Assembly (NCBI GenBank): GCA_946965045.2
Contig: OX337241.1
Location: 744,001-808,000 of the forward strand
Length of the DNA stretch: 64,000 nucleotides
Origin: Epithemia pelagica
Taxonomy: Eukaryota > Protista > Bacillariophyta
Direction of reading: 5' to 3'
The notes beneath the pieces were generated by a model. That model ran no database searches, had not been told where the DNA came from, and saw only the letters and a list, made by a program, of their open reading frames with translations. This document shows positions 1 through 16,481 of the stretch, piece by piece. The stretch's first letter is position 1; every line of letters starts with the position of its first letter. Made by a program: the position numbers and the translations under genes.

Positions 1-3000
1 TGCTTCACGAATTCGTTTTTCTTTGCTCATTTCAGCACAAACTTCAGGTGTTTCCAATCCACCAGACAAGAGAGAGCGTTCATCCTCGTCCTCAGAAAGT
101 TCCTCAAAGTACGTCATACCAATGGACTGATCGTTTGTGACTAGCCCCTTCTCTGCATCTGCTTTCTTGTTGTACTCCACATAACTCTGAGTTGCATCCC
201 TCATGCCACTCATCTGAACAAGAGCAGTTTGTCTTGTAGAGAAATCCTTGGTGGCCGCTTTCTCCTTTGTGGATGAATCCATAGTTGTGCCTGCCTCGTT
301 CAATGTATCAGACGTCTCGGAGTTACCAATTCCAACGTAGTGTGATATTTGTTGTTTAGTATTTCGTTGCAATTCCAACTCTCTGGCGATAATCTCCCGC
401 TTAAGTGACCTGGTTAGAAAATCCATTGTCCTCATTTCATAATGCTTCTTCAGCATATTCGCCATAAGTTTATTCTGTTGAAACCACGTTCCTAACGAAA
501 AAATGCGTTCCTGGAACGCATTGGTGGACGGCTTTGTGAGCCATATCATTGCCATCACATACATAAGAGGGAATTCTGTCTTGTGATCGCTCCACCAGGC
601 CATGATATCGAAATACTTTGATATCTGACAATAATTCGAATTCAAACAGGCTTTTCGAAAAGCAGTCTTCTCCTGTTCGTTCCATTTTGGTGCCTCGTTT
701 GAATATTTCTCTGTTGGATAGTCTGCAATGACCTTGGCCCATTGCTTGTCAATATGGACCCCACACATTCGTTTAAAGGAATCGAAGGCTTCTGTGCAAG
801 CATTTTTTAATGCCACCAGAACCTCGGTTTCTGTGCCTCCCATAGAGGCCGCTCCAGTGATCTGGAGAAGGGCCTGTTCTTTGAGTTCTCTTGTTCTGCG
901 TATGGACTCAAAAACATCTTCTTCTTCATACCGTTCCTTCTTCTTTCGTGAAGATCCTGTGTTGCCTGGGTTGGTAGGGGGAGTTGCTGTAGTCTCTTTG
1001 GGTGGAGTAGTTGGTTCCCCCTGGGATTGCTGTCGTTGTTTTTCAAGTAGCGCGCCAAGAGGTGAAGCCTTAGCGTTGCTGAACTTGGACATCATGTCGT
1101 CTAAGAAAATACGACGAGCCTTCCTTACTTTTTCGGAATCGAATATGGCCAAAGACTGGAACATGTTGTCATAAATATTCGCCAACATAGGATTGCAGCA
1201 AACTGCTTTCAACGCATCCTCATCTGTATCCAAAAGATAGATGCAGTACTCATGCAGAATCCGGCGAATGAGCTTCTTGGGACCATCACCCAATTCATTG
1301 TAAGACACTCCAATTCGCAATGCGTTCAACTCACTCATGGGTGCAGATGCATCCCATTTCTCGTCTTCTTCAAGATCCGCCTCGTTGACTGGAACGCAGG
1401 AGACTTTGCTCATCCTCATTCGTTCAGTCTTGAAATGAGAGAGATAAATCTCCAGAAGCGTGGCCGAACTGGCGCCAGGTTCGTCGGTTTGGAGCTGTAG
1501 AGCAACAGCCTTCAGAGGACTGAGGATACCTTCATATTGGGCCAGAAGGTCCCATTCGTCTTGAGTAGGATATAGAGAAACAAAAGTAGGGTCACTGAGT
1601 TTTGATGTCAGGACATAAAGATCGAAAAACCATTTGTTCCGCAGTAAAGCTTGGATGAGAATGACACATCCACCAACACGGGTGTCGTTTGGCATGGGGA
1701 TTAAGATCAACGTGAACCCCAGTTCTTCGGCCTTCTTCTTGAGTTTCTCCCAACGATGAAATGCGTGCTTGCTAGTCACCCACCCAGCCAGTTTCTTGAA
1801 TTTTCCATACAGTTCACAAAATTCTGGAAAAGAATCGATAAGAACACCTTTCCTGAACCGTTGCACAAGCCCTGTGGCGTGCTTGAGGACCAATTCGGCC
1901 CGATGCATATCGCATCGGCCAACCTTGGCATGATCTCCGACAATGTATTTACCGGCAAGGACAGCAGCTGATGTATTGTCATTTACCGAAGCCACAAGGT
2001 CGTCTTGATTGAAACCGACAGACATGAGTAGGGAGTGTGTTAGGTTAGCCACATCCACGGCCGCATGGCCCTTAGTTTCAGCCAAGCCAATGGGGATTCG
2101 ATATACAACACTATTGCGTGGGTCAGCAAACATGAGAGTGACCCCAAGGACATCATGACGTCGCGCCTGCCAAATGTCGTGGCAGACCGTGGCAAACGCA
2201 ATCTCTTTGCCACATAGGGTCTTGTATTCTTCTCGGACGTTCCTTGCTAGAGAGGCAACAGTTGAGACATAGTCCTTGTATGAATCCATTCGAAGCTTGG
2301 TGACCTGGCGGCGGCTCATGACTTCGGCACGGGTGTCCTTTAGTTGGCCACCATTTTGAAAAGCATATCGGAGGAGTTCCCGGAACTGGGGTTTTTCCAC
2401 GGTATTGGCGGGGAGACAACAATCATTTACAAACTCGTATATGAGCTGTCTTAATTGTCCAACGGCTTCCTTGCGAGGAGATAGGTCGGATGTGAACCCT
2501 TTTAGTGTAGATTGGTTCAACTTCTCTTCACTTGACACTCCAAATACTTTTTCGTCGCCCCCATGATGCTTGTCAATGTGCTGCTTCACATTGGATGGCT
2601 TCTCATCGCTGCAGGTAATGCAACATTTAAACAAAGGGACATCGGGGTTTTTAAAACAGAGCGGACAGAGAACCATTCGGTGAGCAAGTAATTTGTACTT
2701 GGCCTTGTACTCCTTGTTGGAAAGTTCTCCTTCAACAACAATAGGGAGAGGATTCCCATCGGCATCGTATTCTTGGTCTTGTACGGGTGGTTCTCCCAAG
2801 AACTCACCCATGATATCATGGATTTTCGAAAAGCCTCGAAAAGAGGCTGGAAGATCCTTCAGGGTGCCATCCCATACCCACTTGAATAGGGCTTGCCAAT
2901 CAACATGGAGAACCCAATCCCAACGTTTCGAGGGGCTGTTGGAGAATAAGAGGTTAGGCTTCCCCTTGTGGACAGGGATAAGTTCTTTTTCAGACAGGAT

Positions 3001-3120
3001 GAATTCTTGTTTGGCATTGACTTGGTCTTCGATCTCCTCCTGAACGATTTTGTTTCTTGCAGAAACGGCTGCCGATTGCTTTGGAAGAGGAGTCTTCTTC
3101 TTCTTCGACGAAGGTGACAT
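1..3120 (-). CDS. hAT transposase, copy 1, 3'-truncated by the window edge (at least 1040 aa)
   Basis: Not in the ORF track because there is no stop inside the window. Hand translation from ATG at 3120 is open to position 1. Motifs: BED-like CPLC..HIDKHH, CHDIWQ, VNDNTS, CDMH (CxxH), PNDTR, and hATC WWSDHKTEFP..PSTNAFQERIFS. Confidence 0.9.
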   Translation of the reverse strand, partial: MSPSSKKKKTPLPKQSAAVSARNKIVQEEIEDQVNAKQEFILSEKELIPVHKGKPNLLFSNSPSKRWDWVLHVDWQALFKWVWDGTLKDLPASFRGFSKIHDIMGEFLGEPPVQDQEYDADGNPLPIVVEGELSNKEYKAKYKLLAHRMVLCPLCFKNPDVPLFKCCITCSDEKPSNVKQHIDKHHGGDEKVFGVSSEEKLNQSTLKGFTSDLSPRKEAVGQLRQLIYEFVNDCCLPANTVEKPQFRELLRYAFQNGGQLKDTRAEVMSRRQVTKLRMDSYKDYVSTVASLARNVREEYKTLCGKEIAFATVCHDIWQARRHDVLGVTLMFADPRNSVVYRIPIGLAETKGHAAVDVANLTHSLLMSVGFNQDDLVASVNDNTSAAVLAGKYIVGDHAKVGRCDMHRAELVLKHATGLVQRFRKGVLIDSFPEFCELYGKFKKLAGWVTSKHAFHRWEKLKKKAEELGFTLILIPMPNDTRVGGCVILIQALLRNKWFFDLYVLTSKLSDPTFVSLYPTQDEWDLLAQYEGILSPLKAVALQLQTDEPGASSATLLEIYLSHFKTERMRMSKVSCVPVNEADLEEDEKWDASAPMSELNALRIGVSYNELGDGPKKLIRRILHEYCIYLLDTDEDALKAVCCNPMLANIYDNMFQSLAIFDSEKVRKARRIFLDDMMSKFSNAKASPLGALLEKQRQQSQGEPTTPPKETTATPPTNPGNTGSSRKKKERYEEEDVFESIRRTRELKEQALLQITGAASMGGTETEVLVALKNACTEAFDSFKRMCGVHIDKQWAKVIADYPTEKYSNEAPKWNEQEKTAFRKACLNSNYCQISKYFDIMAWWSDHKTEFPLMYVMAMIWLTKPSTNAFQERIFSLGTWFQQNKLMANMLKKHYEMRTMDFLTRSLKREIIARELELQRNTKQQISHYVGIGNSETSDTLNEAGTTMDSSTKEKAATKDFSTRQTALVQMSGMRDATQSYVEYNKKADAEKGLVTNDQSIGMTYFEELSEDEDERSLLSGGLETPEVCAEMSKEKRIREA

Positions 3121-3596
3121 GATTCTTGTTGTCAATAACTTCACCAACTAGTGATCAGGGATCGGTGGGAGAGTGAGTCTGATCCTGCGATGGAACTTTG
3201 GCTGATTGTTGAAGGTAAAGGTACGCAATCTTTGGAGGTGCAGTGACCATGTGATCCATTTCTCATCTGTTTGTTTTCAATAATAAGATTCGCAGAGGGG
3301 GGCAGTGTCTATCTTTGCGTCAGTTACTAAGGGTAAATACAGTGATTGCGGCGATGACACTATTAACTGACAAATGTCAGTAAATGATGTCATATTCGTA
3401 GGATGAGGATTAATTTGGTCAAGAACGGAGGCCAGACAATGAGGTCGTGAGGAATGTGGGGGGATATTACCCTACTAGAATGGTGGGTAATATCATTATA
3501 GAATATATGTGTATGGCGAGAGATATGAGGAATTAATTCTTAGAATAATTCATGGCAGGAAAAATGGGAGAATTAATTCGAAAAATATATGATATA

Positions 3597-3938
3597 TAAG
3601 ACTGGTTCCATTGTGGGCACGGATATTTCAGAGGGGTCCCAATTTGAGTTCGTTACATAGATCAACTCGTCTTTGAATGCTCTTTCGATTGGTTCAATAT
3701 ATGCCTCGCCAAATTAAGATATACACTTTGAAATATTGGGCTAAAGTATGGCCGGCAAAATTTTAGTATTCAAAACCCTAATGTGAGATGTGCTAAAAGG
3801 TACGTAAAAACGGTACTGCAGTCGCGCACGTGAATGACAATAGGGGTATATCGCGCGCATACCGCGCAAAACTTTCAAGCTTGATTTCTCGGAAAGTGGA
3901 TTTTTCAAATATCCCTGGTGACGATGGAATCAGTCTTA
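3597..3938. mobile_element. 342-bp MITE with TA TSD (Tc1/mariner-type) nested in hAT copy 1
   Basis: TAAGACTGGTTCCATTG at 3597-3613 versus the reverse complement of 3922-3938, TAAGACTGATTCCATCG (15/17). Flanked by TA (3595-3596, 3939-3940). No equivalent segment in the matching region of hAT copy 2. Confidence 0.75.
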
Positions 3939-4003
3939 TATGAATTTAATGACCAAATTACGTCAGATCAGTTGAAATATGAATAAGTAGCTTCACAACC
4001 CTG

Positions 4004-4085
4004 TTTATAGACTGCATGTCGTGGATAAGATGCAACTGCCGATGTCAATTTCCCTCAACTCTTCTATTCCCGGTTTCCGGGGTGT
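4004..4085. repeat. 82-bp inverted repeat, left arm (partner 11255-11336)
   Basis: TTTATAGACTGCATGTC...CCGGGGTGT is the exact reverse complement of 11255-11336 and starts at the base after the hAT copy-1 terminus. Confidence 0.95.
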
Positions 4086-4145
4086 GCTCGGTTTTTGGCT
4101 AGGCGCTCATCCCCAAAGGAGGTGCTATGGAGGCACTCATATGAC

Positions 4146-4167
4146 CTAGATATCAGGGTTGTGAAGT
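4146..4167 (+). repeat. TSD (CTAGATAT, 4146-4153) plus left TIR (CAGGGTTGTGAAGT, 4154-4167) of hAT copy 2
   Basis: Read directly from the sequence; matches the right end at 10919-10940. Confidence 0.95.
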
Positions 4168-4595
4168 ACCTTAACGACATATATGAATATAATTAGTGTA
4201 ATATATCCTGCGACCAAAAATAGTAGGATAAATTAATATCATATAATTCATATCTATCTACCTTTATGAATTTCATTTTTTCAAATATTCATTGCCTATA
4301 AAACCATTTTACTTCATTTCGGTTATATATTCATTTCTGAAAATCTAACGGAATTAATTTCTCTCATTAATTACTTCCTATAATTATGTCTTATTTCACT
4401 TTACTTAATTAAATGATGTGAATTAATTCTGCTCATTTTAGTAATTATATTCATTCCATTGTGTTTCACACACAATATCGCTATGGCTACGTGACTCGTG
4501 ACCGATCCAGTCATGTTACAGGACTGTAGGAGAGAACAGTACTTCCGAGGTGCTGCTTTTGCATCAACGCCTCACTTGTTGAACACCATGGCACC

Positions 4596-6497
4596 ATGGC
4601 ACTTGCTTCCCGTCCAAATGTTATTTTCGAATCGAAATGCTTTCCCCAATACCTCATGCATTGCAACCCTTCTTTATATACCATATTGATTGAATTGAAA
4701 GGCACACTTGCCTCGCAAAATCCTTCTGTCTCCCAAACATTACATGCCATTCAACGAAAAACCATACACTGGCTCATCCGTGTTGGTGGTCAAATCGAAT
4801 GTCCTCAACATGATACTGCCACACACAAATGCTGTATTCCCACTCTCTCTTTCCAAGATAAGCTCGACTTGATTTCCAGTATCATCCATCATACTCTTTT
4901 CCGAGGAACCCCCATCGCCAAGGACCCTTCCTTTCCTACTCAACACTATTGCATTGTGGATCAGCCCACTGCTTGCACGACCATCATTCTATCTCTTCGG
5001 TGCAATACACAATTTACAATTGTTGAAAACAATGCAATGACTGACTGTCTTCATTTCATAGAACACCAGCGCACGGTTTGTCCTACCACTTCTATCCATT
5101 CTCTTGTCACATCTTGGATGATCAGGAAGATGCCCCTTATTTGTGTCCGTCAAAGACCACAAGAAATGGATGGGTTCAATGTCCTTGATTTACCCATTTC
5201 TCCAAGAGATGAATGTTCACCTCAAACCGAGTTCTACATCCCCTCGACTGCAGCTCCTTTCCTTTCCTTGCTCGAGGATCATGCGAGCGCCACCACCTCT
5301 TGTGTCGCATCAAAAGAGGAAATAGAAATTGTTCATCCTAACCCTACACCAACTTGTCATGCAACAGGAATAACAAGTTATCAATCAGCTCTTCGATCTC
5401 CAACTCCTCCGCAACAACCAACCCACAGTCTTCAATCTTCATACGAGACTCCCCAACGGCCACAGGATCTGACCCACTCCGTATCAACTATGGCTGATGT
5501 TGCTACTCATTCACCCAAAAAGCAAAGAACCTTGAATCAAAACCTGTTTCCGGCTCATCGGTATTCAACTAGAGGTCAGAATGGTAAGATCACTGAATAC
5601 CTTCTGTCCATGTCACGGTCGAAGAAAACAATTCAGTATGTTGATGGCCAGACACAGAGACACATGCCCGGAGAAAAACCACTCCTCAAACAACACACAG
5701 AGACTCATGTACCACTTCCTGATTACGACAAACATCCAGAACTCAAACTGGAGCGGATTCTACAATTTTATTCCCTTCTAAACTTTTGGGAACCCTTGAA
5801 GAAGGACGGAATCGATGTTCCTCGCGATTCCTGGGAGGATTGGGTGGATTCATCTATTTCCCTAGATGACCCACAGGCCGACAGAGCTTTCATGTTCTTG
5901 ATGACAATCTGCATGAGCTCCAGTACCTCAGATGCTCAGCTCAGCACCATCATGCCGCGCGTGTTTTCATTTGGATTAACTTCTGCCACTGCCGTATCGG
6001 ATATTGCTTTTATGAATGCTTTCTGTTCCATCCTCTCTGAAGCAGGCCTTTTCTACAAAAACACTGAATGCATTCTCAATGCCGCTGATTACTTTATACA
6101 ACAATATAATGGCACGGTTCCCCCCAACATATCCATCGAAGAGCTCTCTACTTTGTATGGGATTGGGTATAAAACGGCTGCGATAGTGGTTGAAGCCTCT
6201 TTTGGTCGAACCGACGGAATTCCTTCGGACATCCATGTGATGCGATGGAGCAAGTATTTGGGCTGGACTGCAAGTACATCGAATGGCTATCATTGCTCTA
6301 AAGAATTGGAATCCTGGGTTCCCCGACATTTCTGGAATAGAGTCAATCCACTGCTTGGGTCACTCAGCCAAATGGCTGTGTCTTCTGAAGCACCCAAAGT
6401 TCGAGAGCTCCTTGTAGAGTACAAGCATATGTGCCCTGACTTCAAAGCCAAGGTATTGAGTCAATTCGACAGATATACTAAGAAGAGAAAGTCGTAG
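4596..6497 (+). CDS. 633-aa protein with a C-terminal endonuclease III (Nth)-like HhH-GPD DNA glycosylase/AP-lyase domain, inside the hAT element
   Basis: MSSSTSD (cf. Nth S-Q-T/A-x-D), HhH LYGIGYKTA with the catalytic Lys, GIPSDIHVMRWSKYLGW with the catalytic Asp, and LESWVP..W..VNPLLGSLSQ. No C-terminal 4Fe-4S Cys cluster. NLS-like KKRKS and PKKQR. The N-terminal ~390 aa are unassigned. Confidence 0.85.
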   Translation: MALASRPNVIFESKCFPQYLMHCNPSLYTILIELKGTLASQNPSVSQTLHAIQRKTIHWLIRVGGQIECPQHDTATHKCCIPTLSFQDKLDLISSIIHHTLFRGTPIAKDPSFPTQHYCIVDQPTACTTIILSLRCNTQFTIVENNAMTDCLHFIEHQRTVCPTTSIHSLVTSWMIRKMPLICVRQRPQEMDGFNVLDLPISPRDECSPQTEFYIPSTAAPFLSLLEDHASATTSCVASKEEIEIVHPNPTPTCHATGITSYQSALRSPTPPQQPTHSLQSSYETPQRPQDLTHSVSTMADVATHSPKKQRTLNQNLFPAHRYSTRGQNGKITEYLLSMSRSKKTIQYVDGQTQRHMPGEKPLLKQHTETHVPLPDYDKHPELKLERILQFYSLLNFWEPLKKDGIDVPRDSWEDWVDSSISLDDPQADRAFMFLMTICMSSSTSDAQLSTIMPRVFSFGLTSATAVSDIAFMNAFCSILSEAGLFYKNTECILNAADYFIQQYNGTVPPNISIEELSTLYGIGYKTAAIVVEASFGRTDGIPSDIHVMRWSKYLGWTASTSNGYHCSKELESWVPRHFWNRVNPLLGSLSQMAVSSEAPKVRELLVEYKHMCPDFKAKVLSQFDRYTKKRKS

Positions 6498-6612
6498 TAG
6501 TTTTCCTTCTACTTTTTTAATGTAACGTCAATCCACGTAATACTAATTCTTGTTAATCTCTCTTTGTTCTTGTTAATCTCTCCTGTCGTCATTACATCAT
6601 CACCTTGGAGTC

Positions 6613-9600
6613 TTAATCTTCATGATGATCATTATCTTCATGATCATTCTCTTCTTCCGCATCTGAATCGGACTCTAACTCTTTCAAGACATCGACAATT
6701 TTGTCGTATTCGGACTTATCATTCACACCCTCATCTTCATCGTCCTCTGCATTGTATTCCCGATCATCCTTCGGTGCACCCTTTCTCTGTTTGACAAGTG
6801 TCCTAATGTCCCCTTGACGCCGACCACCTTTGTCTTGTTGTTTCTCATCTATCTTTGGAGCACACGGAGAACCCACCTGCAGTTTGTCTTGTCTCTTAGT
6901 TTTGGCTTTGCGAGGAGGAGACCTACGAGTTGGCAGGAGCTTTTGTTGTTTTGTTTTCTTACGAGAAGATCCAGTTCCACTGCCACTGCCCTTACGCTTG
7001 ACCCCAGTGGTGTCTTCTGCAATAGTGAGATTAATCGTGTCCTGCACTACCGCATCCTCCAGTCCTTTCAACTCATCATCAAATACCTTGTTCATGGCGG
7101 CGTCGCTATCTTCGTCATCATCGTTGTCACTCTCGTCCGCAGATGAGTGTGGTGCTGAATCGTCATCTGGATGTCTGTCAAACCGCACTACTTTCACAGT
7201 GTCCCATTCAATGGGTTTCTTTTTGCCTTCTTGGACCAACTTTGAAAGCCGTTGTGCATGTTGAACTCTTTTCTTTTTCGCCATTTCAGCCCGGGCTTCT
7301 GGTGTTTCTAAACTTCCAATAACCTGCTGCAAGTCATCTTCATCGCTATCGTCACTGAGGTCTTCAAAATATTGGAAGTGTACTGACGCATCATTAGTGA
7401 CACGATCCTTTTCGGCGTCTGCCTTCTTATTGTAGGCAATAAAGCCCTGAGTTGCATCTCTCATGCCACTCATTTGCACCAGGGCCATTTGTTCTGTTGA
7501 GACTTTTTCCTTGACAGGTGGCGTCTTGGTATTTACTGTCCTCCCTTGTTCTGAACCCTCTTGTGCAGTACCGGCTTCTTCCGAGATGCCGACTCCGACA
7601 TAATGGCTTTGAGGTTTGTCGGAGGCCATCTGAAGCTCCATCTCCCTCTTAACAATCTCTCGTTTAATAGACCGCGTAAGACAATCAATGCTTCTCATTT
7701 CAAAATGTTTTTTGAGCAGGTTAGCCATCAGCTTGTTCTGTTGGAACCACGTTCCCAAAGAAAAAATACGCTCTTGAAACGCATTAGTAGATGGTTTGGT
7801 CAACCAAATCATGGCCATGACGTACATCATAGGAAATTCTTTCTTGTGTGAATTCCACCAGGCCATGATATCGAAATATTTGCCAATCTGGCAATAGTTG
7901 CCGTTCCGACACGCTTTATGAAAGAAGGACTTTTGTTCATCGTTCCAATCTGGTTCCTCATTCTTGTACAGCTTAGTAGGATATTGGGCGATTACTTCGG
8001 CCCACTTTTTATCCACGTGAACACCACACATTCTTTTGAAAGCGTCAATCGACTCCTGACACGCGTTTTTCAAAGCTAATAAGACTTCAGTCTCTGAACC
8101 AGCCAGGGATGCAGCACCAGAGATCTGCAGAAGGGCCTGTTCCTTCAGTTCTCTGGTGCGACGCATCGATTCGAAGACGTCTTCTTCTTGATAGCGTTCT
8201 TTTTTTTGGATCCGGCTTTGGATCCTGCTTTGGATGCAATTGGAGGAGTCATTGGGTTGTCGGTTTTTTCGTCGGAGTCTTTGTCGGATGGTTTTTGTTG
8301 CTTGTGGATAAGAGCACCAATAGGACTAGCCGTCCCACTGCTAAACTTTTTCATCATGTCGTCCAAGAAAACTTGGCGGGCTTTGCGTACCTTCTCCGAG
8401 TCGAACGCAGCAAGAGATTGGAAGGTATCTTCGTAAATATCTGCCAACATAGGGTTGCAGCAGACTGCCTTCAAAGCATCTTCGTCCGTATCAAGAAGAT
8501 ACATACGGTACTCATGAAGAATGCGGCGAATGAGTTTCCTGGGTCCATCACCCAGCTCATGATACGCCACTCCGACGCGCAATGAGTTTAGTTCACTAAT
8601 GGTTGCAGAAGCATCCCATTTCTCGTCTTCTTCCAGATCAACTTCGTTCACCGGAATGCAGGCCACTTTGCTCATCCTCATGCGTTCTGTTTGGAAGTGC
8701 AAAAGGTAGATTTCCAACAGCGTTGCCGAACTAGCGCCTGGGTCGTCAGATTGCAACGAGAGTCCAACTGCCTTCAATGGGCTCAAGATGCCTTCGTATT
8801 GTGCTAGAAGTTCCCATTCATCTTCAGTTGGATAAAGCCGAACAAAAGTTGGGTCACTTGCTTTCGAAGGGAGGACATACAAGTCGAAGAACCATTTGTT
8901 GCGCAGAAATGCTTGAATCAGAATGATGCAGCCCATAACGCGAGTGTCGTTAGGAATGGGTAGTAAGATCAGATGGTATCCCAGTTCTTCTGCCTTTTTC
9001 TTAAGCTTTTCCCAACGATGAAAGGCATGCTTGCTTGTTACCCAACCACCCAGTTTTTTAAATTTTCCATATAGGTCGCAAAAGTCAGGGAAAGAGTCAA
9101 TGAGAACTCCTTTCCTATACCTTTCTACGAGTCCTGTAGCATGCTTGAGGACCAACTCGGCCCTATGCATATCACACCGACCTGCCTTGGAATGATCACC
9201 CACAATGTACTTGCCCGCCAGTACCGCGGCCGACGTATTGTCGTTAACCGAAGCAATTAGGTCGTCTTGGTTGAAACCAACAGACAGCAAGAGTGAGTGT
9301 GTCAGGTTGGCTACATCAGCGGCCGAATGCCCTTTGGTTTCGGCCAAACTAATAGGGATTCGGTAGACGACACTGTTTCTTGGGTCACTGAACATTAATG
9401 TGACTCCTAATACGTCATGCCGTCTTGCCTGCCAAATGTCATGGCATACCGTCGCGAAGGGTATTTCCTGACCGCATAGAGTCTTGTATTCTTCGCGAAC
9501 ATTTCTAGCAAGTGCAGCAACGGTCGACACGTAGTCCTTATAGGAATCGACACGCAACTTTGTCACTTGTCGCCTGCTCATCGCTTCGGCCCGGGTGTCC

Positions 9601-10394
9601 TTAAGCTGTCCCCCATTGTTGAATGCATATCGGAGCAATTCGCGAAATTGGGGCTTTTCGATGGTGCTCGCAGGCAAACAACAATCATTAACGAATTCGT
9701 AGATAAGTTGTTGCAATTGACCAATGGCTTTCTTTCGGGGAGAAACTTCTGCCGTGAAACCTTCAAGTGTTGTTTGGTTCAATTTGTCTTCGATCACAAC
9801 TCCAAATACTTTTTCATCGCCACCATGATGTTTATCTGTGTGCTGTTTCACATTGGAAGGCTTGTTATCACTGCAACTAATGCAACATTTCGCCAAAGGG
9901 ATGTCCGGGTTTTTGAAACAAAGTGGACAAATTACCATTCGATGAGAAAGTGGCTTGTACTTGTCCTTGTATTCCTTGTCAGAAAGTTCTCCTTCAGGAT
10001 CAATTGGAAGAGGATTTCCATCATTATCATATTCGGCTTCTTGTTGTGGGGGTACTCCAAGGTAATCCTCCATGAGGTCGTGGAGCTTCACAAACCCTTT
10101 GAAGGTAGCGGGAAGATCTCTGACTGTGCCGTCCCAAAGCCATTTGAAAAATGCCTGCCAATCAACATGGAGAACCCAATCCCAACGTTTTGAAGGACTG
10201 TTGGAAAATAGAAGTTTGGGTTTCCCTTGATGAAGAGGGATGAGCTCTTTTTCGGCAAGGATGCGTTCTTGTTTTGCTCGGACTTGATCTTCTATCTCTT
10301 CTTGGACGACTTTGTTACGGGCAGCAATCGCAGACGCCTTCATCTTGGGAGGAGGAGGCTTCTTTTTCGAAGGCTTTTTGGAGGTAGGCGACAT
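6613..10394 (-). pseudogene. hAT transposase, copy 2, split by a 1-nt frameshift in an A8 run (plus-strand T 8200-8207); ~1260 aa if corrected
   Basis: ORF 8145-10418 has the BED-like finger, CHDIWQ, VNDNTS, CDMH and PNDTR. ORF 6613-8166 has hATC WWNSHKKEFP..PSTNAFQERIFS. One extra A gives KKKERYQEEDVFESMRRTRELKEQ, collinear with copy 1 KKKERYEEEDVFESIRRTRELKEQ. Confidence 0.85.
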
Positions 10395-10918
10395 GGAAGT
10401 TGTTGTTGTCAAGATCAATTGGCGGTCAGAGGCAGCTTGTGGCTGGTGATGCTATGGATGGAAAGGAATGTGGCTGATTGTTGAACAAGATAAAGGTACG
10501 ATCTTTGGAGGTGCAGCGATCATGTGTTTCATTTCTCATCTGTTTGTTCTTGTGAAACAAATTGTCAGAGGGTCAGTGGGTATCTTGTCGTCAGTTACTG
10601 TGGAAAAACAGGGTGATTGTTGCAATAGGACTATTAACTGACAAAGTGTCGGTAAATGATATAATATTCGTAGGATAAGGAGTGAATTGGGATAAGAACG
10701 GAGGCCAGACAATGATGAAGAATATCAGTAGGTAATATATTCCCGTGACGGGAATATGTAGAATTAATTTAAAAAATATATTCATGTGGAAAAATATGGG
10801 GAATTAATATGAAGAATATATTACGTGTATGGTGGTAAAGGGTAATTCATTTGAAGACAGAACTGATGGGTAATTAAATTACCAAAATGTATCAGATCAT
10901 TTGAAATATGAATAAGTA

Positions 10919-10940
10919 ACTTCACAACCCTGCTAGATAT
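10919..10940 (-). repeat. Right TIR (10919-10932) plus TSD (CTAGATAT, 10933-10940) of hAT copy 2
   Basis: ACTTCACAACCCTG followed by CTAGATAT. Confidence 0.95.
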
Positions 10941-11254
10941 GTGTCATATATGGGTGCAATGGGGTATCAAATAATGTTGATAGAGGATGTCTTGGAGAAG
11001 AACTTTGAGCATCCACACGTTGCCGTAGGCCTAATATTGATCATGTTCTATCTAGTTGAAACTATGTGCCCAAAGGGTCTTTCTAGGCCGAAATGGGCAC
11101 AACCCGAGACGAGGCACTAGTAGACTCGTACAGCAGCGAGTACAGAAAATAGAAAATAGAAAATACTCGTCTTTTGATAGAACAATGGAGAATTGATGGC
11201 GAACAGATTCCAGGCTCAAGACGCCATCAACCACAAAGACTTACCAGAAAAACA

Positions 11255-11336
11255 ACACCCCGGAAACCGGGAATAGAAGAGTTGAGGGAAATTGACATCG
11301 GCAGTTGCATCTTATCCACGACATGCAGTCTATAAA
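11255..11336. repeat. 82-bp inverted repeat, right arm (partner 4004-4085)
   Basis: Exact reverse complement of 4004-4085; ends 4 bp before the ATG at 11341. Confidence 0.95.
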
Positions 11337-11340
11337 ACAA

Positions 11341-12014
11341 ATGAACGCATCAGCAATTTCGCTGTTAGAACAGGGGCAGTTGGACGCGTCCTTATCCATA
11401 TTTTACAGTGCTTTGGAAATGGCTCGCAATTGCTGTTGTAACGATCTTACCGACGGAAACAAAACGGATGGTCGTCCTTACACGGTTAGCGCTGTTCGAT
11501 TATCCGACAACAAAAATCTGAGTCCACTGATACAGCGAGCTGGAGATGCATTTCTCTCGAACGACTTTGACATATTTCAAAGAGTCTTTGTGCTAACAAG
11601 GCATGGAGACGAGGAGTGTCAACAGGTGGATGACGTAGAGGTTCTCGTTCTGCTATACAATTTTGCCTTTACGCTGCACATGACAGGAATCATTAGCAAG
11701 GATGCAATTCGAAGAGAACGGGCATTCCGGAAGGCTCTTCATGTATACAAGATGACCAACGCGTGTGCGAGATCAATAAGGAAGATTATCCAGAGTTTTG
11801 CACATTGCTGCTGGCCCTCGCCACGAATCAAGGGTATATACACTCTTTTTTCTACCACCAAGAAGACGTACAAATACTGCACGAAAAAATTGTGAGCTTT
11901 CTCACCCTGACTAATGAAGCAGCAATGGCCCTGCTTGGACAAGATTATTATTTCTTTGAAGGTGTTGCAGTGTGTAGTGGCTTTGCCAAGACGAAACTGC
12001 CACCAGTGGCCTAG
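11341..12014 (+). pseudogene. Diatom-type hypothetical protein, apparently frameshifted near 11763
   Basis: MNASAISLLEQG..LYNFAFTLHMTG in one frame continues as ..LLLALATNQGYIH in the next frame. Removing 2 nt from GCGTGTGCG joins them. Family resemblance is from memory of diatom expanded proteins. Confidence 0.5.
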
Positions 12015-13580
12015 CTACCCACCTCATGAACAGTCACAAGTTTCCAACGCTGTGGAATTCGTCGTGTTGCATGTTTCACTTTTTTGATGTATGACTAGAA
12101 ATGACGGCAGCTTCATGTTGTATGCTTTTTGGAAGGCGAGAAAGATATCCGAAGCATCGGGTGCATGGTCTGCAAACAATCACGCTAGCTAAATAAGTAA
12201 TTTAACCCTCATTCATAATCCTAAAGCCATTGAAACATATTCCATTTGGATCATAGATTATCTCAGTCTTCCATACCTATAAAGCTCACACGAAATGTTG
12301 CATGAAGAAGTTTGGGCCGAGACTAGCAGCTGCCGTACATTTGGTCAAGTGCGGTTTACAATCTTGTTCCCTTAACACGACAGTGCCAAGCTGGCGCTAC
12401 CAAAATATTGCACTGGGTTTGCGTTGTACGAGGCAGAGCGAGTAGTAGTGACTCCAGAACCATATTACGAGCAAGTGCTGTGACCAGCCCTTCGCAAATA
12501 ATCAATGAACCAGATTTACGATCCCTCCGTTGTCATATGGACTGTTTCCTTTGATATCTTTCCATTTACTCTGTGTTGTTGATGACTTGTTGCTTGCTGT
12601 GTTTGTCAATTGTGAAGAGAGAAGAGCCAATACCCACATAATCTCAACCTTTGTCGTCAGTCGTCCACAGCGACGACGCTTGCCCCGGTCGCGGAGACCA
12701 CGCGGCGTATTTTGAGTCATTCGTTTTGTCTCCTCAATTGCATTTACCGAAGCCCTCCACACTGCCTACACGAACAAGTTTCTACATGTTCACCTTTCCA
12801 ATTAGACACCACCGTCCAGACGAACGATGGACGAAGACCAGAAGTTGCTCCGGTGCCTAATGATCTGTGGCCTCTCCATCTTGCTATCGTAGATGTACCA
12901 CAGAACGGACGTCCCTGTAAGTCACATTTTGGATCATCATTCACCCCTATCAAGATTGCTGTCCGTCACCATTCAACACACGTTGCGTGGCAAGGGCTAT
13001 CAACAAAGTTTCCAACGATCTGGTTGCTCGAGGCCAAGCCGATAGCTTGGCAATCATTCAAGAGAGATCGTTGAATGTTTCTTGACCTATTGTGTCATAA
13101 TTAGGTGGACACAAACAAACAATGCCCAAAAAATCGTCATCGACAGGTGTTAGACGTCAATTCACCACAAACAACAACTTGGTACATCACAACAATTCAA
13201 ATACATACATATCATGAAGGAAAATGAAACTGGAGGATGATCCAAACTATCAGGAACAAGACACCAAACTTTTGTTTTCCAGGGATCTTGTCCTCTGATG
13301 GATGGTGAACAGCGTTTGCAATATCACCACGCCATTGTCATTCATGAGAGACCAATGTCAGATTCTCACCAAATAACTGGAGAAGCAAGTACCAATCCAT
13401 TATTCACAGTGATGAATAAGAAGGTGAGAAGAAAGCGCTTCAGAAATCCCTACAACCGCCGCAATCGCACCATCGTCGACTTGTGGGATCTTGTAGCTGA
13501 AAGATACCTCGAGCGGCGTACAGACGACCGGACTTTGCAGAGAGTTCAAACCAACCAGAAAAAACTCTGCGGTCGTGACA

Positions 13581-14648
13581 ATGATGATGCAAGACCATCT
13601 GCAATCACAAAACTTCAACTTGGTCGTTCCCGGCCAATTGATTGCTGTGAGTCGAAAAGGAGACGAAGAATCATCCTTTCTACGTGGTCATGGCACATAT
13701 ATTGACGAAGACGAGAGCTCGACGAAACATCATGGCGATGGTGAACTTCACCTGCGTGCTTCTGTAACAGGGACAGTCCAACGGGTGAACAAGTTAATAT
13801 CGGTGATTCCCTTGGCAGTTCATCGCTACGATGGTAATGTGGGTGATTTGGTGGTGGGTCGGATCGTCTCTGTGGGATTGAATCGTTGGAAGGTCCAATT
13901 GTTGGCACATCAACCAGCCGCCGTGTTGCCCTTATCTGGTGTCCACCTACCTGGTGGTGTTCAGCGTATGCGAACACAGCAAGATGCTCGCGAAATGCGA
14001 CAGTATTTGACGGAAGGTGATATCGTATCGGCTGAAGTCCACAAATCCTTGTCGAACAAGGATGGGGCGTCAATGCAATTACATACTCGATCGACTCGGT
14101 ATGGGAAATTGGAAAATGGATGTTGGATCCAAGTTCCACCAGGTCGCATCCCAAGGAGAAAGCACCATTATGTCAACAATTTCCTACAAGGAAAATTCGA
14201 TATTCTTCTAGGGTGCAATGGATGGATCTGGATGCAACGAGCAACTCAGAAATCGTCACCTACGAATGCGCCCAGCACTGTACAGGACACGGAGACAAAA
14301 GGGGATGGAACAGAAGAACGAGGAGATGCAGCGAATGCGATCTCGGGACCCGAACTGGCTGAATTACATGAAGCTCAAAGGGCACTACATGCCGCATCGC
14401 CCTACAGTCAGGACGAACGCCTGGCCTTGGCGAGGTTGCGCAATGTCGTAGAATCACTGCGCTATGGAGGGTCTGTACCAATCACGGTAGAATCCCTGGA
14501 ACAAGCATACCAGTTCTCCTTGGACCAAAATTGGAAACCCACCGATTTGTTGCTTCCTCAAAATGTTGTAATCTTGACCACCCACCTGTGTCGCAAAACC
14601 ACATACTACCCTCAACACCAACAGTCACTACCGACAACAGCGCATTGA
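13581..14648 (+). CDS. RRP4: Exosome complex component RRP4 (EXOSC2)
   Basis: VVPG..FLRGHGTY, ASVTGTVQRVNKLISV, S1 domain GDLVVGRI..RWKV, LPGGVQR, GDIVSAEV, LHTRSTRYGKL, KH domain GCNGWIW. Confidence 0.93.
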   Translation: MMMQDHLQSQNFNLVVPGQLIAVSRKGDEESSFLRGHGTYIDEDESSTKHHGDGELHLRASVTGTVQRVNKLISVIPLAVHRYDGNVGDLVVGRIVSVGLNRWKVQLLAHQPAAVLPLSGVHLPGGVQRMRTQQDAREMRQYLTEGDIVSAEVHKSLSNKDGASMQLHTRSTRYGKLENGCWIQVPPGRIPRRKHHYVNNFLQGKFDILLGCNGWIWMQRATQKSSPTNAPSTVQDTETKGDGTEERGDAANAISGPELAELHEAQRALHAASPYSQDERLALARLRNVVESLRYGGSVPITVESLEQAYQFSLDQNWKPTDLLLPQNVVILTTHLCRKTTYYPQHQQSLPTTAH

Positions 14649-15212
14649 CAGAAGCGTAGATGATTTGGAAGAACGAAAATTACACATTGCGAACAACAAT
14701 AATCAATGCCGTTTGGAACTTTTCAAGATGTCTGCAAGATGTTCAAACATACCCCGATTCCTCCCAACGATTGCTGGTTTTGAATGACTCTGATTCCATC
14801 ATCACATGTTTTGTTTGATCTTGATCAGATGAAGAGAATATGCCGTGGTCATACCCTTTGATTTGGTTTTCGAACTGCCAAACACGAAGTTGACTCTTGT
14901 GTGAACACTAGAGGAGTACCGTTAGCTGTGCTGGCCGCCATGGTAGCTACGTCATGTTCAAAATTCAAAACCTGGCTCTTCTTGGGTCTTGGGGGAAGAC
15001 GGGAAGACCGCGTTGTACACTAAATCCTATAGTGACATCCGTGTGACTGTTTGAAAGATCCGGTACCACATCACGAACTGGCAGCCTACACGTCCAAGTC
15101 CAACGCAACCAAGGCCCAATTCCATTCGGTTCTGTTCTCTTGTCATTCAGTTGCATCATCCGTAGCATCAAAAAGCCTGAGCCCTTTTTCGCGTCTGGTT
15201 CACTATCAAGCC

Positions 15213-16481
15213 ATGAGGCGCTCAAACTCAACTGAAATGAGGCAACATACACAAAGTACGTTTAGTTTTACCATGGAAGACGGTGGTGGGTGCTCTTGTC
15301 CGCCGGAGGGCAAAGTTCGCCAACGACATCATACTGGCGACGCTACTTCTGGTTCGTCTTTTTTCTCATGGAGTTGGTTCTCGCTCCCTGGCGTTCGCGG
15401 ATCACCGAGACATGCACAATCCCAAGGATCTGATAATGAGGTCGAGGGAAATGACATATATCCTTTGATTACCAAAACAAAAAATCTTGACTATGAATAT
15501 ACATCCCAGAGTAGTGACAGCGCAGATTCGTTCGATTCGGTATCCTTTGATTTGGAAAACCAAAGACCCCAGACGTTTCCTGACAAAGTGAAGAGACCAA
15601 CGCGCCCCTTGGGAAAATTGCGAGAATCAATTAAAGAGAAATCAAAGCCACTTGACGTGAACGAATACGCTGCCTGTCGTGAAATGACCAAGACTCAAGA
15701 ACTTTGGAACGCCGTATCTATGGTTCCACCTACTGTCTATTGTTTCGTCTACATGTGCACCACCGCCTGGTGGATCAATGCTGACTTATTGGCCAAGGCT
15801 GAAGAAGACTATGTCTCAGATCCCCAGAATTTTATTGCTCAAGTGTCTGGCCAAACTACAGAGAACGCGACCTGGGGCAACTTCAGAGCAGCGCAGTTTA
15901 GTCCTGGGTGTTTGCACTCTGATGTGTTACCGGCGCTTCCTCCCCTGACCGTTTTGGCTGTTATTGCTGGAACGGCATTGCACATGCCTTGTTCCTTTCT
16001 CTATCATTGGAAATATTCCCACACATTGGACCGTATTGCCAGGTTGAATCACTGGAGTCGACGACTGGATCATGCAATGATTCATTTGTGCTCGGCCTTG
16101 TATGCTTATGGGTCGTCTGGGAGTCTCGATTTTTTCCTCGCATCTGCTCTGTTCAATCTTCATTGCATGTACCGTCATTTCTTTCTTCCTCACTCTCGAC
16201 CTCGAAGCAACCAGCTTCGCGTCGCGATTGCGATTATCGCCTACTCCTTACCAATCCTCCGACGAGGAGATGTATGGATATTTGTTCTCTTTTGGGCCAT
16301 TGTTGGCTTTGGTCTATGGCTTTTTTCACAATATCCCATTGGAGGATGGTCCCATTGCGCCTTTCACCTGGTGATTGGTTGTGTCCCTGTGCTCCTACTG
16401 GAAGTGGCAAAGGCATTACCTGTGGCACAGCCTGAGCTTATGCTAGCGGCACAGTGCTCTGTTCTGAACCAGCACTCATAG
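15213..16481 (+). CDS. Multi-pass membrane protein, PAQR/haemolysin-III (CREST)-like; start uncertain
   Basis: SFLYH..RRLDHAMIH..HCAFHLV metal-binding pattern in a hydrophobic C-terminal half. Confidence 0.65.
   Translation: MRRSNSTEMRQHTQSTFSFTMEDGGGCSCPPEGKVRQRHHTGDATSGSSFFSWSWFSLPGVRGSPRHAQSQGSDNEVEGNDIYPLITKTKNLDYEYTSQSSDSADSFDSVSFDLENQRPQTFPDKVKRPTRPLGKLRESIKEKSKPLDVNEYAACREMTKTQELWNAVSMVPPTVYCFVYMCTTAWWINADLLAKAEEDYVSDPQNFIAQVSGQTTENATWGNFRAAQFSPGCLHSDVLPALPPLTVLAVIAGTALHMPCSFLYHWKYSHTLDRIARLNHWSRRLDHAMIHLCSALYAYGSSGSLDFFLASALFNLHCMYRHFFLPHSRPRSNQLRVAIAIIAYSLPILRRGDVWIFVLFWAIVGFGLWLFSQYPIGGWSHCAFHLVIGCVPVLLLEVAKALPVAQPELMLAAQCSVLNQHS

What the first reader, a model, noticed from the sequence alone, without database searches (positions are those of the whole stretch)
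4154..10932. A complete hAT transposon carries an intact endonuclease III-like DNA glycosylase gene
Seen: perfect 14-bp TIRs and an 8-bp TSD enclose two convergent genes (stops 115 bp apart), the transposase and an uninterrupted 633-aa ORF. The ORF's last ~240 aa have the HhH-GPD signature with both catalytic residues (LYGIGYKTA Lys, SDIH Asp) and NLS-like basic motifs. Established: hAT elements normally encode only a transposase; HhH-GPD enzymes include Nth and the plant 5mC-excising DEMETER/ROS1; Arabidopsis VANDAL elements encode VANC anti-silencing proteins; diatoms methylate transposons. Inference: this may be a transposon-encoded base-excision enzyme that counters 5mC silencing or processes excision/insertion intermediates. 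I know of no described hAT family with this cargo. Passive capture of a host gene is the main alternative.
Basis: partly seen in the sequence, partly recalled or inferred. Interest (0 to 1): 0.92.

Follow-up and report, generated by a model that had tools for sequence, protein, structure and literature searches.

The report
hAT transposon with its own glycosylase
This cut-and-paste jumping gene belongs to an old, diversified family that carries, beside its transposase, a conserved DNA base-excision enzyme derived from endonuclease III; no such transposon gene appears in the literature I could search, and it may let the element remove silencing marks or damage from DNA.

Summary
Window 4154-10932 is a 6,779-bp hAT element with perfect 14-bp TIRs, an 8-bp TSD (CTAGATAT) and two convergent genes whose stops lie 115 bp apart. 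One caveat: as assembled, the transposase is split by a 1-nt shorter T-run at 8200-8207.

The 633-aa ORF has three parts: a well-folded N-terminal domain with no known relative, a disordered linker, and a C-terminal endonuclease III fold (NTHL1 Z 18.7). The catalytic Lys526 and Asp545 are present. The [4Fe-4S] cluster is absent.

It is not a one-off capture.
- The same glycosylase/transposase pair lies inside TIR+TSD-bounded elements at seven or more other sites of this genome, at 34-97% protein identity.
- The pair also occurs on metagenome contigs from other samples.
- All these glycosylases form one clade apart from canonical Nth.
- They diverge in step with their transposases.
- dN/dS between subfamilies is about 0.2.

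Function is untested; no RNA run was listed. My best guess (about 0.35-0.4) is excision of a silencing-related base, 5mC or a derivative, from element DNA. CpG transitions are 8-12-fold enriched between copies, which suggests the host methylates these elements.

Eight literature searches found no report. The closest analogue is TET/JBP genes in fungal DNA transposons. This scan had already flagged the same family at other loci of this genome.

The parts
4146..4153 (.). left target-site duplication CTAGATAT
   Evidence: identical 8-mer at 10933-10940
4154..4167 (+). left terminal inverted repeat CAGGGTTGTGAAGT
   Evidence: exact reverse complement at 10919-10932; same TIR core in L001-L008
4596..6497 (+). 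glycosylase gene, 633 aa, intact ORF
   Evidence: the blastn alignment to subfamily L002 starts 5 bp before the ATG and ends 5 bp after the stop
4596..5330 (+). N-terminal family-specific domain (aa 1-245), two beta-beta-alpha-alpha-beta modules
   Evidence: AF2 pLDDT mostly above 90 with the 121-row alignment; no fold match above Z 5.4, only weak winged-helix-like hits
5331..5558 (+). disordered Pro/Ser/Thr/Gln-rich linker (aa 246-321)
   Evidence: pLDDT below 50; not alignable between subfamilies
5559..6494 (+). conserved basic lead-in (STR...SRSKKTIQY...RHMPGE) plus Nth-type HhH-GPD glycosylase domain without Fe-S cluster (aa 322-633)
   Evidence: NTHL1 7rdt Z 18.7, EndoIII 2abk Z 15.3; Foldseek E 9e-8; TIGR01083 nth E 5.8e-18; 0/50 family rows have the Cys4 motif
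6171..6173 (+). codon of Lys526, predicted Schiff-base nucleophile (GIGYKTA)
   Evidence: aligned to the NTHL1 GVGPK Lys; Lys in 44/44 family rows
6228..6230 (+). codon of Asp545, catalytic Asp of the GPD motif (SDIH)
   Evidence: aligned to NTHL1 VDTH; Asp in 98% of family rows
6498..6612 (.). 115-bp spacer between the convergent stop codons
   Evidence: the spacer is 34-226 bp in all related loci
6613..8166 (-). transposase, C-terminal reading frame (517 aa): hAT dimerisation domain (7753-7935) and long charged tail
   Evidence: Pfam PF05699 30.8 bits, above cut-off 21.4
8145..10418 (-). transposase, N-terminal reading frame (757 aa): BED-like CxxC...HxxxxHH motif and catalytic core
   Evidence: 79%, 45% and 38-40% identical to transposases of L002, L004, L011/L012
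8200..8207 (.). T8 homopolymer where the transposase frame breaks (one base shorter than in intact relatives)
   Evidence: extra T in runs X2/X3, not in X1
10919..10932 (-). right terminal inverted repeat
10933..10940 (.). right target-site duplication CTAGATAT
1..4003 (-). 3' two thirds of a second element of the same family (subfamily of L002/L003, 99.6% identical); its glycosylase gene lies left of the window
   Evidence: right TIR 3990-4003 with one mismatch

Best explanation
Window 4154-10932 is one copy of an old, diversified lineage of hAT transposons whose autonomous members encode two proteins: the transposase and, convergent with it, a roughly 600-aa DNA glycosylase. The glycosylase is an integral, selected transposon gene acquired once, long ago, from an endonuclease III/NTH-type ancestor. 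It keeps the Lys/Asp pair of a bifunctional glycosylase/AP-lyase. It has lost the [4Fe-4S] cluster and has changed several DNA- and lesion-contacting positions (Gln to Ser at 443, GxGPKM to GxGYKT). It is fused through a disordered linker to a lineage-specific N-terminal domain. Shown: the anatomy, mobility with the element, single origin, co-divergence with the transposase, purifying selection, fold and catalytic residues. Inferred: the enzyme flips out and excises a modified pyrimidine from DNA and nicks the site, so that host base-excision repair restores an unmodified base. The most likely target is 5-methylcytosine or a derivative on copies of the element, which would counter methylation-based silencing. 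The faster-evolving N-terminal domain possibly directs it to the element's own DNA. I put about 0.9 on the 'integral conserved transposon gene encoding an active Nth-derived glycosylase' part and about 0.35-0.4 on the anti-silencing mechanism. The confidence given is for the whole statement.
For: TIR plus perfect 8-bp TSD enclose both genes here and in L002, L003, L004, L006 and L007. L005 is nested in a short relative, and L008 has TIRs. L002 and L003 are 99.96% identical elements at different sites. The same convergent pair occurs in every locus whose context could be seen: L001-L008 from one assembly, JGI metagenome L011, a sediment metagenome L012, and the partial contigs L009 and L014. 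A profile search of 1.84e9 representatives gave 41 family hits at E<1e-30, then a gap down to ordinary Nth. In the tree, 39 family rows form one clade (SH-aLRT 99, stem 0.79), with canonical Nth on the other side. Glycosylase identity (97/60/43/39%) follows the same order as transposase identity (97/79/45/~43%). dN/dS is 0.20 (W-L002) and 0.17 (W-L004). In the C-domain, aa identity exceeds nt identity. The DNA alignment between subfamilies is confined to the ORFs. Fold: NTHL1 Z 18.7. Lys is present in 44/44 and Asp in 98% of family rows. For the silencing idea: CpG o/e is 0.71-0.84 in seven elements against 0.86-0.98 in their flanks. The transition rate at CpG sites is 8-12x that elsewhere between close copies, against about 0-3x in a tandem-repeat control from the same window. 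Diatom DNMT5 methylates and represses TEs (PMC9998398). DNA transposons, including hAT7, that carry a demethylation enzyme (TET/JBP) are known in fungi (PMC12730594). The N-domain evolves faster than the catalytic domain (omega 0.30 vs below 0.2).
Against: There is no transcription evidence: the only runs listed hold genomic contigs. There is no biochemical or methylome data. The substrate cannot be read from the sequence. The domain is closer to Nth/NTHL1 (Z 15-19) than to the 5mC glycosylase ROS1 (Z 11.5). The CpG-decay signature shows that the copies compared were not protected from methylation. All loci were found through the glycosylase, so 'every autonomous copy carries it' is not shown. 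The transposase-first scan of metagenomes gave only one weak locus, and contexts of the transposase hits could not be fetched. The N-domain has no recognisable DNA-binding fold (Z 5.4 or less). That the host is a diatom comes from earlier scan notes and was not verified here.
Confidence: 0.45

Rival explanations
1. The glycosylase is a conserved transposon gene, but it works in repair rather than anti-silencing. As an Nth-like glycosylase/AP-lyase it removes oxidised or deaminated pyrimidines, or processes AP or dRP ends, near excision and integration sites. Alternatively it protects element DNA from mutational decay, raising the survival of transposition events.
For: The nearest relatives by sequence and fold are genuine repair enzymes, NTHL1 and EndoIII. 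The Lys nucleophile that gives lyase activity is invariant. hAT transposition leaves breaks and gaps that the host must repair (established knowledge).
Against: hAT chemistry (hairpin on the flank, 3'-OH attack) creates no damaged bases, and the host presumably already has BER. A generic repair enzyme acting in trans gives little advantage to the element that encodes it. Family-specific replacement of lesion- and DNA-contact positions and loss of the Fe-S cluster argue for a changed role. CpG decay between copies shows no special protection.
Confidence: 0.25
2. The protein is a catalytically silent, or rarely catalytic, DNA-binding accessory factor. An HhH scaffold plus the N-domain would help assemble the transpososome or regulate the transposase, like the second proteins of PIF/Harbinger or CACTA elements.
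For: Two-protein DNA transposons are known (established knowledge). The N-terminal domain is large, well folded and family-specific. The convergent layout with a spacer of 34-226 bp is invariant.
Against: The catalytic Lys and Asp, and the surrounding Nth core residues (S441, T444, D446, H547, W557, N584, Q592), are kept in 95-100% of about 45 diverged members. That is not expected if only binding mattered.
Confidence: 0.1
3. Passive, recent capture of a host NTH gene by this copy or subfamily, with no function for the element.
For: DNA transposons do capture host fragments. The close pair W-L001 has dN/dS 0.58 overall and about 1 in the N-terminal part, as expected for copies drifting after insertion.
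Against: The gene is present in all subfamilies seen, down to 34% identity, and in other samples. The family has a single clade with a long stem away from canonical Nth. It co-diverges with the transposase. Omega between subfamilies is about 0.2. Every member has a 320-aa N-terminal extension and lacks the Fe-S motif that 41/71 canonical rows show. NCBIfam nth scores 65 bits against an equivalog cut-off of 212.
Confidence: 0.03

Closest known systems
Fungal DNA transposons that encode a TET/JBP dioxygenase (Kyakuja/Dileera/Zisupton, hAT7, Harbinger, EnSpm and others; PMC12730594)
   Same: An autonomous cut-and-paste transposon, including a hAT lineage, carries a second gene for an enzyme that acts on modified DNA bases. 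The gene sits next to the transposase inside the TIRs. It is proposed to act against methylation.
   Different: The enzyme class is different: an oxidative dioxygenase there, a base-excision glycosylase/lyase here. According to that paper the TET genes moved often between transposon superfamilies. Here the gene has one origin and co-diverges with one hAT lineage. The host is an alga, not a fungus. The TSD is 8 bp, not 7 bp.
Endonuclease III / NTHL1 (canonical Nth, TIGR01083; PDB 7rdt, 2abk, 1orn)
   Same: Same fold (Z 15-19). Same HhH-GPD motif with a Lys nucleophile and catalytic Asp. Many core residues are shared.
   Different: No [4Fe-4S] cluster. The Gln at position 443 (Gln in 85% of canonical rows; from memory, this is the residue that plugs the gap left by the flipped-out base in EndoIII) is replaced by Ser. 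GxGPKM is replaced by GxGYKT. There is a 320-aa N-terminal extension. It is encoded by a transposon. It scores far below the equivalog cut-off (65 vs 212 bits).
DEMETER/ROS1 5-methylcytosine glycosylases of plants (PDB 7yho)
   Same: An Nth-related bifunctional HhH-GPD enzyme with a large non-catalytic N-terminal region. This is the only known class of glycosylase that erases 5mC directly, which is the function proposed here.
   Different: The structural match is weaker (Z 11.5 against 18.7 for NTHL1). There is no Fe-S cluster, no split glycosylase domain and no DME C-terminal domain. It is not a host gene.
VANC anti-silencing proteins of Arabidopsis VANDAL (MULE) transposons (from memory; not tested here)
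   Same: A transposon-encoded accessory protein that causes loss of methylation at its own family. It evolves fast together with the element.
   Different: VANC is not an enzyme of base excision, and no sequence or fold relation was seen. The transposon superfamily is different.
Clusterless MutYX (PDB 8uuc)
   Same: An HhH-GPD enzyme of the Nth/MutY group that has lost the Fe-S cluster yet still binds DNA. The structural match is Z 14.8.
   Different: It is a bacterial adenine glycosylase without the Lys nucleophile context, and it is not transposon-borne.
Classical hAT elements (Ac, hobo, Hermes, Tol2)
   Same: 8-bp TSD, short TIRs beginning CAG, a transposase with the C-terminal hAT dimerisation domain, and a BED-like zinc-finger motif.
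   Different: They encode a single protein. Here a second conserved gene is present, and the transposase carries a charged tail of about 400 aa after the dimerisation domain.

Membership tests
hAT superfamily of DNA transposons | 8-bp target-site duplication | tested here: met
   CTAGATAT on both sides. Perfect 8-bp TSDs also in L002, L003, L004, L006 and L007.
hAT superfamily of DNA transposons | short terminal inverted repeats | tested here: met
   14/14 complementary, CAGGGTTGTGAAGT.
hAT superfamily of DNA transposons | transposase with hAT C-terminal dimerisation domain (PF05699) | tested here: met
   30.8 bits against cut-off 21.4 in the window. 26.7-30.9 bits in L004, L011 and L012.
hAT superfamily of DNA transposons | RNase-H-like DDE catalytic core with insertion domain | tested here: inconclusive
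   No sequence match to Hermes or any other solved transposase and no Pfam hit for the 757-aa part. The structure was not modelled.
hAT superfamily of DNA transposons | one uninterrupted transposase reading frame (autonomous copy) | tested here: not met
   The frame breaks at the T8 run 8200-8207. Relatives L002-L004 and L006-L008 are single-frame. This may be an assembly error.
HhH-GPD superfamily, endonuclease III (Nth) type | HhH-GPD fold | tested here: met
   AF2 pLDDT above 90 over residues 325-633. NTHL1 Z 18.7 with 213 residues aligned. EndoIII Z 15.3. Foldseek E 9e-8.
HhH-GPD superfamily, endonuclease III (Nth) type | catalytic Asp of the GPD motif and Lys nucleophile after the hairpin (bifunctional type) | tested here: met
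   K526 and D545 align to the NTHL1 residues. They are kept in 100% and 98% of family rows.
HhH-GPD superfamily, endonuclease III (Nth) type | C-terminal Cys-x6-Cys-x2-Cys-x5-Cys [4Fe-4S] cluster | tested here: not met
   0 of 50 family rows have the motif against 41 of 71 canonical rows. NTHL1's Cys positions align to non-Cys residues.
HhH-GPD superfamily, endonuclease III (Nth) type | reaches curated family thresholds (Pfam PF00730 gathering score; NCBIfam TIGR01083 equivalog) | tested here: not met
   Pfam 20.4 vs 26.2 bits; only 1 of 11 members tested passes. TIGR01083 65 vs 211.7 bits. It is homologous to Nth but not an equivalog.
HhH-GPD superfamily, endonuclease III (Nth) type | excises oxidised pyrimidines and cleaves AP sites | not testable with these tools
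   Needs an enzyme assay.
DEMETER/ROS1 5mC glycosylases | discontinuous glycosylase domain, Fe-S cluster and DME-specific C-terminal domain | tested here: not met
   The domain is continuous and has no Cys4 motif. ROS1 matches less well than Nth (Z 11.5). ROS1 did not appear among PDB sequence hits.
DEMETER/ROS1 5mC glycosylases | 5-methylcytosine excision activity | not testable with these tools
   Needs an enzyme assay or a methylome.
Transposon-encoded accessory (second) gene, as opposed to captured passenger | present across diverged subfamilies, co-diverging with the transposase, under purifying selection | tested here: met
Transposon-encoded accessory (second) gene, as opposed to captured passenger | present in all autonomous copies when these are found independently of the gene | tested here: inconclusive
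   The transposase-first metagenome scan gave one weak locus. The transposase protein search found 32 clusters, 11 of them on contigs that also hold a glycosylase, but the contexts of the rest could not be fetched.
Transposon-encoded accessory (second) gene, as opposed to captured passenger | transcribed | tested here: inconclusive
   No RNA run was listed. X1-X3 are genomic contigs.

The most novel reading that the evidence does not exclude
A transposon lineage invented its own base-excision 'demethylase'. The Nth-derived, cluster-less glycosylase excises 5-methylcytosine, or a derivative, from copies of its own family. The fast-evolving N-terminal domain guides it there. Host BER then restores unmethylated cytosine and the element is reactivated. 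This would be a third, independent route to transposon anti-silencing, after VANC and TET/JBP. It would also be a second, independent origin of a DEMETER-like 5mC glycosylase, in a lineage where no active DNA demethylase is known to me.
Probability: 0.3. Interest if true: 0.92.

Novelty: new variant of a known kind. Interest (0 to 1): 0.8.

Why it matters
Transposons that carry enzymes acting on DNA modifications are rare windows into the arms race between mobile DNA and epigenetic silencing. So far the known cases are VANC, which is non-enzymatic, and the TET/JBP dioxygenases of fungal elements. A glycosylase maintained for a long time by a hAT lineage adds a new enzyme class to that list. 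It also gives a compact, testable candidate for active DNA demethylation or targeted base excision in an ecologically important group of algae. The enzyme is of interest in its own right: an Nth-type catalytic core that works without the Fe-S cluster and is fused to an unknown, confidently folded domain. That makes it useful for understanding what the cluster is for, and perhaps as a small programmable base-excision module. Most members fall below Pfam's threshold and none of the 20 clusters checked is in NCBI or UniProt, so the family is effectively unannotated.

Tried and rejected
- RNA evidence: two run searches listed only three runs, whose contigs reach 509 kb, so they are genomic. None was listed with 'RNA' in the library description. 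Transcription remains untested.
- First AF2 model with 5 sequences: pLDDT 49.7, so its fold search was meaningless. It was replaced by a 121-row alignment (pLDDT 83.5).
- N-terminal domain: feature search in the ESM Atlas gave a best score of 0.64 (SPOUT methyltransferases), which I rejected as noise. AFDB, Atlas and PDB fold searches gave nothing beyond Z 4-5 winged-helix-like fragments. No conserved Cys/His tetrad is present across the family, so a zinc-finger reading is rejected.
- Unbiased census from the transposase side: the metagenome scan with a 9-row transposase alignment gave one 24%-identical fragment. The protein search gave 32 clusters but no contexts.
- The 196-aa ORF right of the element has a same-sized ORF at the same distance in L002. 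The two are unrelated, so this is coincidence.
- Host identification through MAT showed only 'eukaryote'.
- Hermes-type catalytic core by sequence: no hit.
- Literature: eight searches covered hAT/glycosylase/diatom, transposon-encoded glycosylase, HhH-GPD plus transposase, second ORF, TET/JBP, diatom TE methylation, and a run accession. None found a report of a glycosylase-carrying transposon. PMC4860697 looked for TE-mediated expansion of plant HhH-GPD genes and, by its own account, found essentially none.

Full report
**Observation**

- CAGGGTTGTGAAGT at 4154-4167 is matched by its exact reverse complement at 10919-10932.
- Both ends are flanked by CTAGATAT, at 4146-4153 and 10933-10940.
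- Inside, the + strand ORF 4596-6497 (633 aa) converges on the transposase. The transposase stop is at 6613-6615, so the stops are 115 bp apart.
- The break is a T8 run at 8200-8207. That run is one base longer in the 98.3%-identical copy L001 and in contigs of runs X2/X3, but not in X1.
- With the extra base the two parts read through as one protein of about 1,270 aa, like the 1,208-1,345-aa single-frame transposases of the relatives.
- I cannot tell a real frameshift from a homopolymer error.

**What the ORF encodes**

- Sequence matches. Pfam HhH-GPD alone is sub-threshold (20.4 vs 26.2 bits). But residues 418-605 match human NTHL1 at E 3.5e-16 and TIGR01083 (nth) at E 5.8e-18.
- Model. With a 121-row alignment, AlphaFold gave a confident model (mean pLDDT 83.5) with three parts:
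  - a compact N-terminal domain (1-245, pLDDT mostly above 90) built of two beta-beta-alpha-alpha-beta modules;
  - a disordered linker (246-321);
  - a C-terminal region (about 325-633, pLDDT above 90).
- Fold of the C-terminal region. It superposes on NTHL1 (Z 18.7, 213 residues), E. coli EndoIII (15.3), MutY (14.9), a cluster-less MutYX (14.8) and, less well, ROS1 (11.5).
- Catalytic residues. Lys526 (GIGYKTA) and Asp545 (SDIH) align with the Schiff-base Lys and catalytic Asp of NTHL1.
- Fe-S cluster. The four Cys ligands are absent. None of 50 family sequences has the Cys4 motif, against 41 of 71 canonical Nth sequences in the same alignment.
- N-terminal domain. It has no convincing relative in PDB, AFDB clusters or the ESM Atlas. 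The only matches are winged-helix-like fragments at Z 4-5. It has no conserved metal-binding tetrad.

**Is it cargo of one copy or a gene of the family?**

- A word-indexed search of 5.8e9 proteins found four relatives, at 97, 58, 40 and 34% identity. An exhaustive profile search of 1.84e9 representatives found 41 family members at E<1e-30, followed by a clear drop to ordinary Nth proteins.
- Every locus whose context I could fetch has the same layout: the glycosylase on one strand and a hAT transposase converging on it, 34-226 bp apart. This covers:
  - L001-L008, all from assembly ERZ21939226;
  - L011, from JGI metagenome 3300048584;
  - L012, from a sediment metagenome (ERZ935987);
  - the short contigs L009 and L014, which end inside a convergent K/E-rich ORF like the transposase tail.
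- TIRs of the CAGGGTTGTG type with perfect 8-bp TSDs enclose both genes in:
  - L002 (TTGTTCAC);
  - L003 (ATTCAGGC);
  - L004 (ATCGACAC);
  - L006 (CTTAAAAG);
  - L007 (GTCCGCAC).
- L005 sits 12 bp inside a short non-autonomous relative that has its own TSD. L008 has diverged TIRs.
- L002 and L003 differ at 3 of 6,798 positions but lie at different sites, so the whole two-gene unit has transposed recently.
- The partial element at the left of this window (1-4003) is 99.6% identical to L002/L003 over 3,597 bp.

**Origin and selection**

- In a maximum-likelihood tree of the catalytic domain (111 rows), 39 family members form one clade (SH-aLRT 99, stem length 0.79; 90 with one more row). The canonical Nth proteins lie on the other side (99). 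This points to a single, old acquisition.
- Glycosylase identity to the window copy (97, 60, 43, 39%) falls in the same order as transposase identity (97, 79, 45, about 43%) for L001, L002, L004 and L005.
- The metagenomic transposases are 38-40% identical to the window's over 500-640 residues. So the two genes have travelled together.
- Between subfamilies dN/dS is 0.20 (W-L002, dS 1.4) and 0.17 (W-L004). In the catalytic domain dS is saturated and aa identity (72%) exceeds nt identity (69%). The N-terminal part has omega 0.30.
- The nucleotide alignment between the W and L002 subfamilies begins 5 bp before the ATG, ends 5 bp after the stop, and skips only the linker. The 5' non-coding 440 bp do not align.
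- The close pair W-L001 has omega 0.58 (about 1 in the N-terminal part, 0.28 in the C-domain). This is what is expected once individual insertions drift.

**What distinguishes the enzyme**

- The Nth scaffold residues are kept in 95-100% of family rows: S441, T444, D446, G522, G524, K526, D545, H547, W557, W574, P576, W580, N584 and Q592.
- Several positions that are conserved in canonical Nth are replaced by a different conserved residue:
  - Gln to Ser at 443. From memory of the EndoIII-DNA structures, this Gln is the residue that fills the gap left by the flipped base;
  - Pro to Tyr at 525 and Met to Thr at 527, so GxGPKM becomes GxGYKT;
  - Lys to Asn at 489;
  - Arg to Ser at 568.
- Together with the loss of the cluster and the added domain, this looks like a neofunctionalised but catalytically competent bifunctional glycosylase/AP-lyase.

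**How it most likely works**

- What is shown stops at 'a conserved, probably active, Nth-derived glycosylase encoded by the transposon'.
- My preferred inference (about 0.35-0.4) is that it removes a silencing-related base, 5mC or a derivative, from element DNA, with host BER completing the replacement.
- The support is circumstantial:
  - Seven elements have lower CpG o/e (0.71-0.84) than their flanks (0.86-0.98).
  - Between close copies the transition rate at CpG sites is 8x (22 of 114 substitutions, W-L001) and 12x (copy 1-L002) the rate elsewhere. A 4-unit tandem array in the same window shows 0-3.4x. This is the signature of CpG methylation of these elements.
  - DNMT5-dependent methylation represses TEs in the diatom Phaeodactylum (PMC9998398).
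  - Fungal DNA transposons, including hAT7, carry TET/JBP genes (PMC12730594).
  - The faster-evolving N-terminal domain could supply family specificity, as VANC does in VANDAL elements (from memory).
- Against it:
  - The domain resembles Nth more than ROS1.
  - The compared copies clearly did suffer CpG decay.
  - Nothing is known about expression.
- The main rival (0.25) is a repair or transposition-support role. A non-catalytic accessory factor (0.1) is made unlikely by the invariant Lys/Asp. Recent passive capture (0.03) is contradicted.

**Mobility in the sequenced material**

- Runs X1-X3 are genomic and belong to the organism of ERZ21939226, because L002's flank appears as a loose end at 4005.
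- They also show other junctions of both subfamilies' ends with different flanks (loose ends at 4003 and 4154).
- In X1 and X2 a contig reads left flank, a single CTAGATAT, then right flank (ATGACCTAGATATGTCATAT). It differs from the expected empty site by a missing GT and a 30-bp indel.
- This suggests that the insertion at 4154 is polymorphic or heterozygous. It rests on 19-20 loose letters.

**Limits**

- All loci were ascertained through the glycosylase. A transposase-first scan of metagenomes failed.
- The transposase protein search found 32 clusters. Eleven are on contigs that also hold a glycosylase. I could not fetch the other contexts. So 'always carried' is not proven.
- That the host is a diatom comes from earlier scan notes. 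I showed only that it is a eukaryote.
- The window copy itself may not be autonomous because of the frameshift. L001, its nearest relative, lacks the right 114 bp including the TIR and has a stop near the transposase N-terminus.

**Novelty**

- Eight full-text searches found no transposon-encoded HhH-GPD glycosylase.
- None of the 20 family clusters checked occurs in NCBI or UniProt. The few named ones are metagenome calls labelled 'endonuclease III'.
- Most members fall below Pfam's threshold.
- This scan has already flagged and followed up the same family at other places in this genome (s1-232827, s1-242207 and several first-reader notes). My results agree with those notes. I add:
  - the fold model;
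  - the family-specific active-site changes;
  - the cluster loss;
  - the CpG-decay control;
  - the frameshift;
  - the read-level polymorphism.
- I class it as a new variant of a known kind: a DNA transposon with an accessory DNA-modification enzyme.

Noticed in passing
window 4004-4085 and 11255-11336: An 82-bp perfect inverted repeat whose left arm starts exactly after the right TIR of the neighbouring element (4003). In runs X1/X3 the 82-bp unitig connects to both contexts. The element|arm junction contig has depth 70-85 against about 260-300 for its neighbours. This may be a polymorphic insertion of that element at 11336/11337 in reverse orientation, an inversion, or a mis-join.
   Followed up: partly
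window 3598-3937: A MITE-like insertion of about 340 bp (TIRs AAGACTGGTTCC / GGAATCAGTCTT, TA-rich 4-5-bp duplication) lies in the subterminal region of the left element. It is absent from the 99.6%-identical copies L002/L003 and from some contigs of runs X1-X3.
   Followed up: partly
window 4110-4153 with 10941-10949: A possible empty-site allele of the element. Contigs in X1 and X2 continue from 4110 into ATGACCTAGATATGTCATAT, which is left flank, one copy of the TSD, then right flank. Differences are a 30-bp indel and a missing GT.
   Followed up: partly
window 36985-43672: A tandem array of four units of about 1.66 kb, 96-98% identical. It was used only as a control for the substitution spectrum. 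Its content was not examined.
   Followed up: no
window 6613-7750 (- strand) and the equivalent part of L004, L011, L012: The transposase continues for about 400-450 residues after the hAT dimerisation domain as a highly charged Asp/Glu/Lys-rich tail. This is unusual, because that domain normally ends hAT transposases.
   Followed up: no
L005 9535-16844: An autonomous element (9547-16214) is inserted 12 bp inside the left TIR of a non-autonomous relative of about 640 bp, which has its own TSD ATCCCAAA.
   Followed up: partly
L001 16201 onward and 13614-15833: The closest relative of the window element lacks the last 114 bp, including the right TIR, and has a stop in the N-terminal part of its transposase. 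So neither copy of this subfamily seen here is clearly autonomous.
   Followed up: partly
window 48443-51940: An S-adenosylmethionine synthetase gene (50807-51940, Atlas score 0.96) lies next to overlapping long ORFs on both strands at 48443-50254.
   Followed up: no
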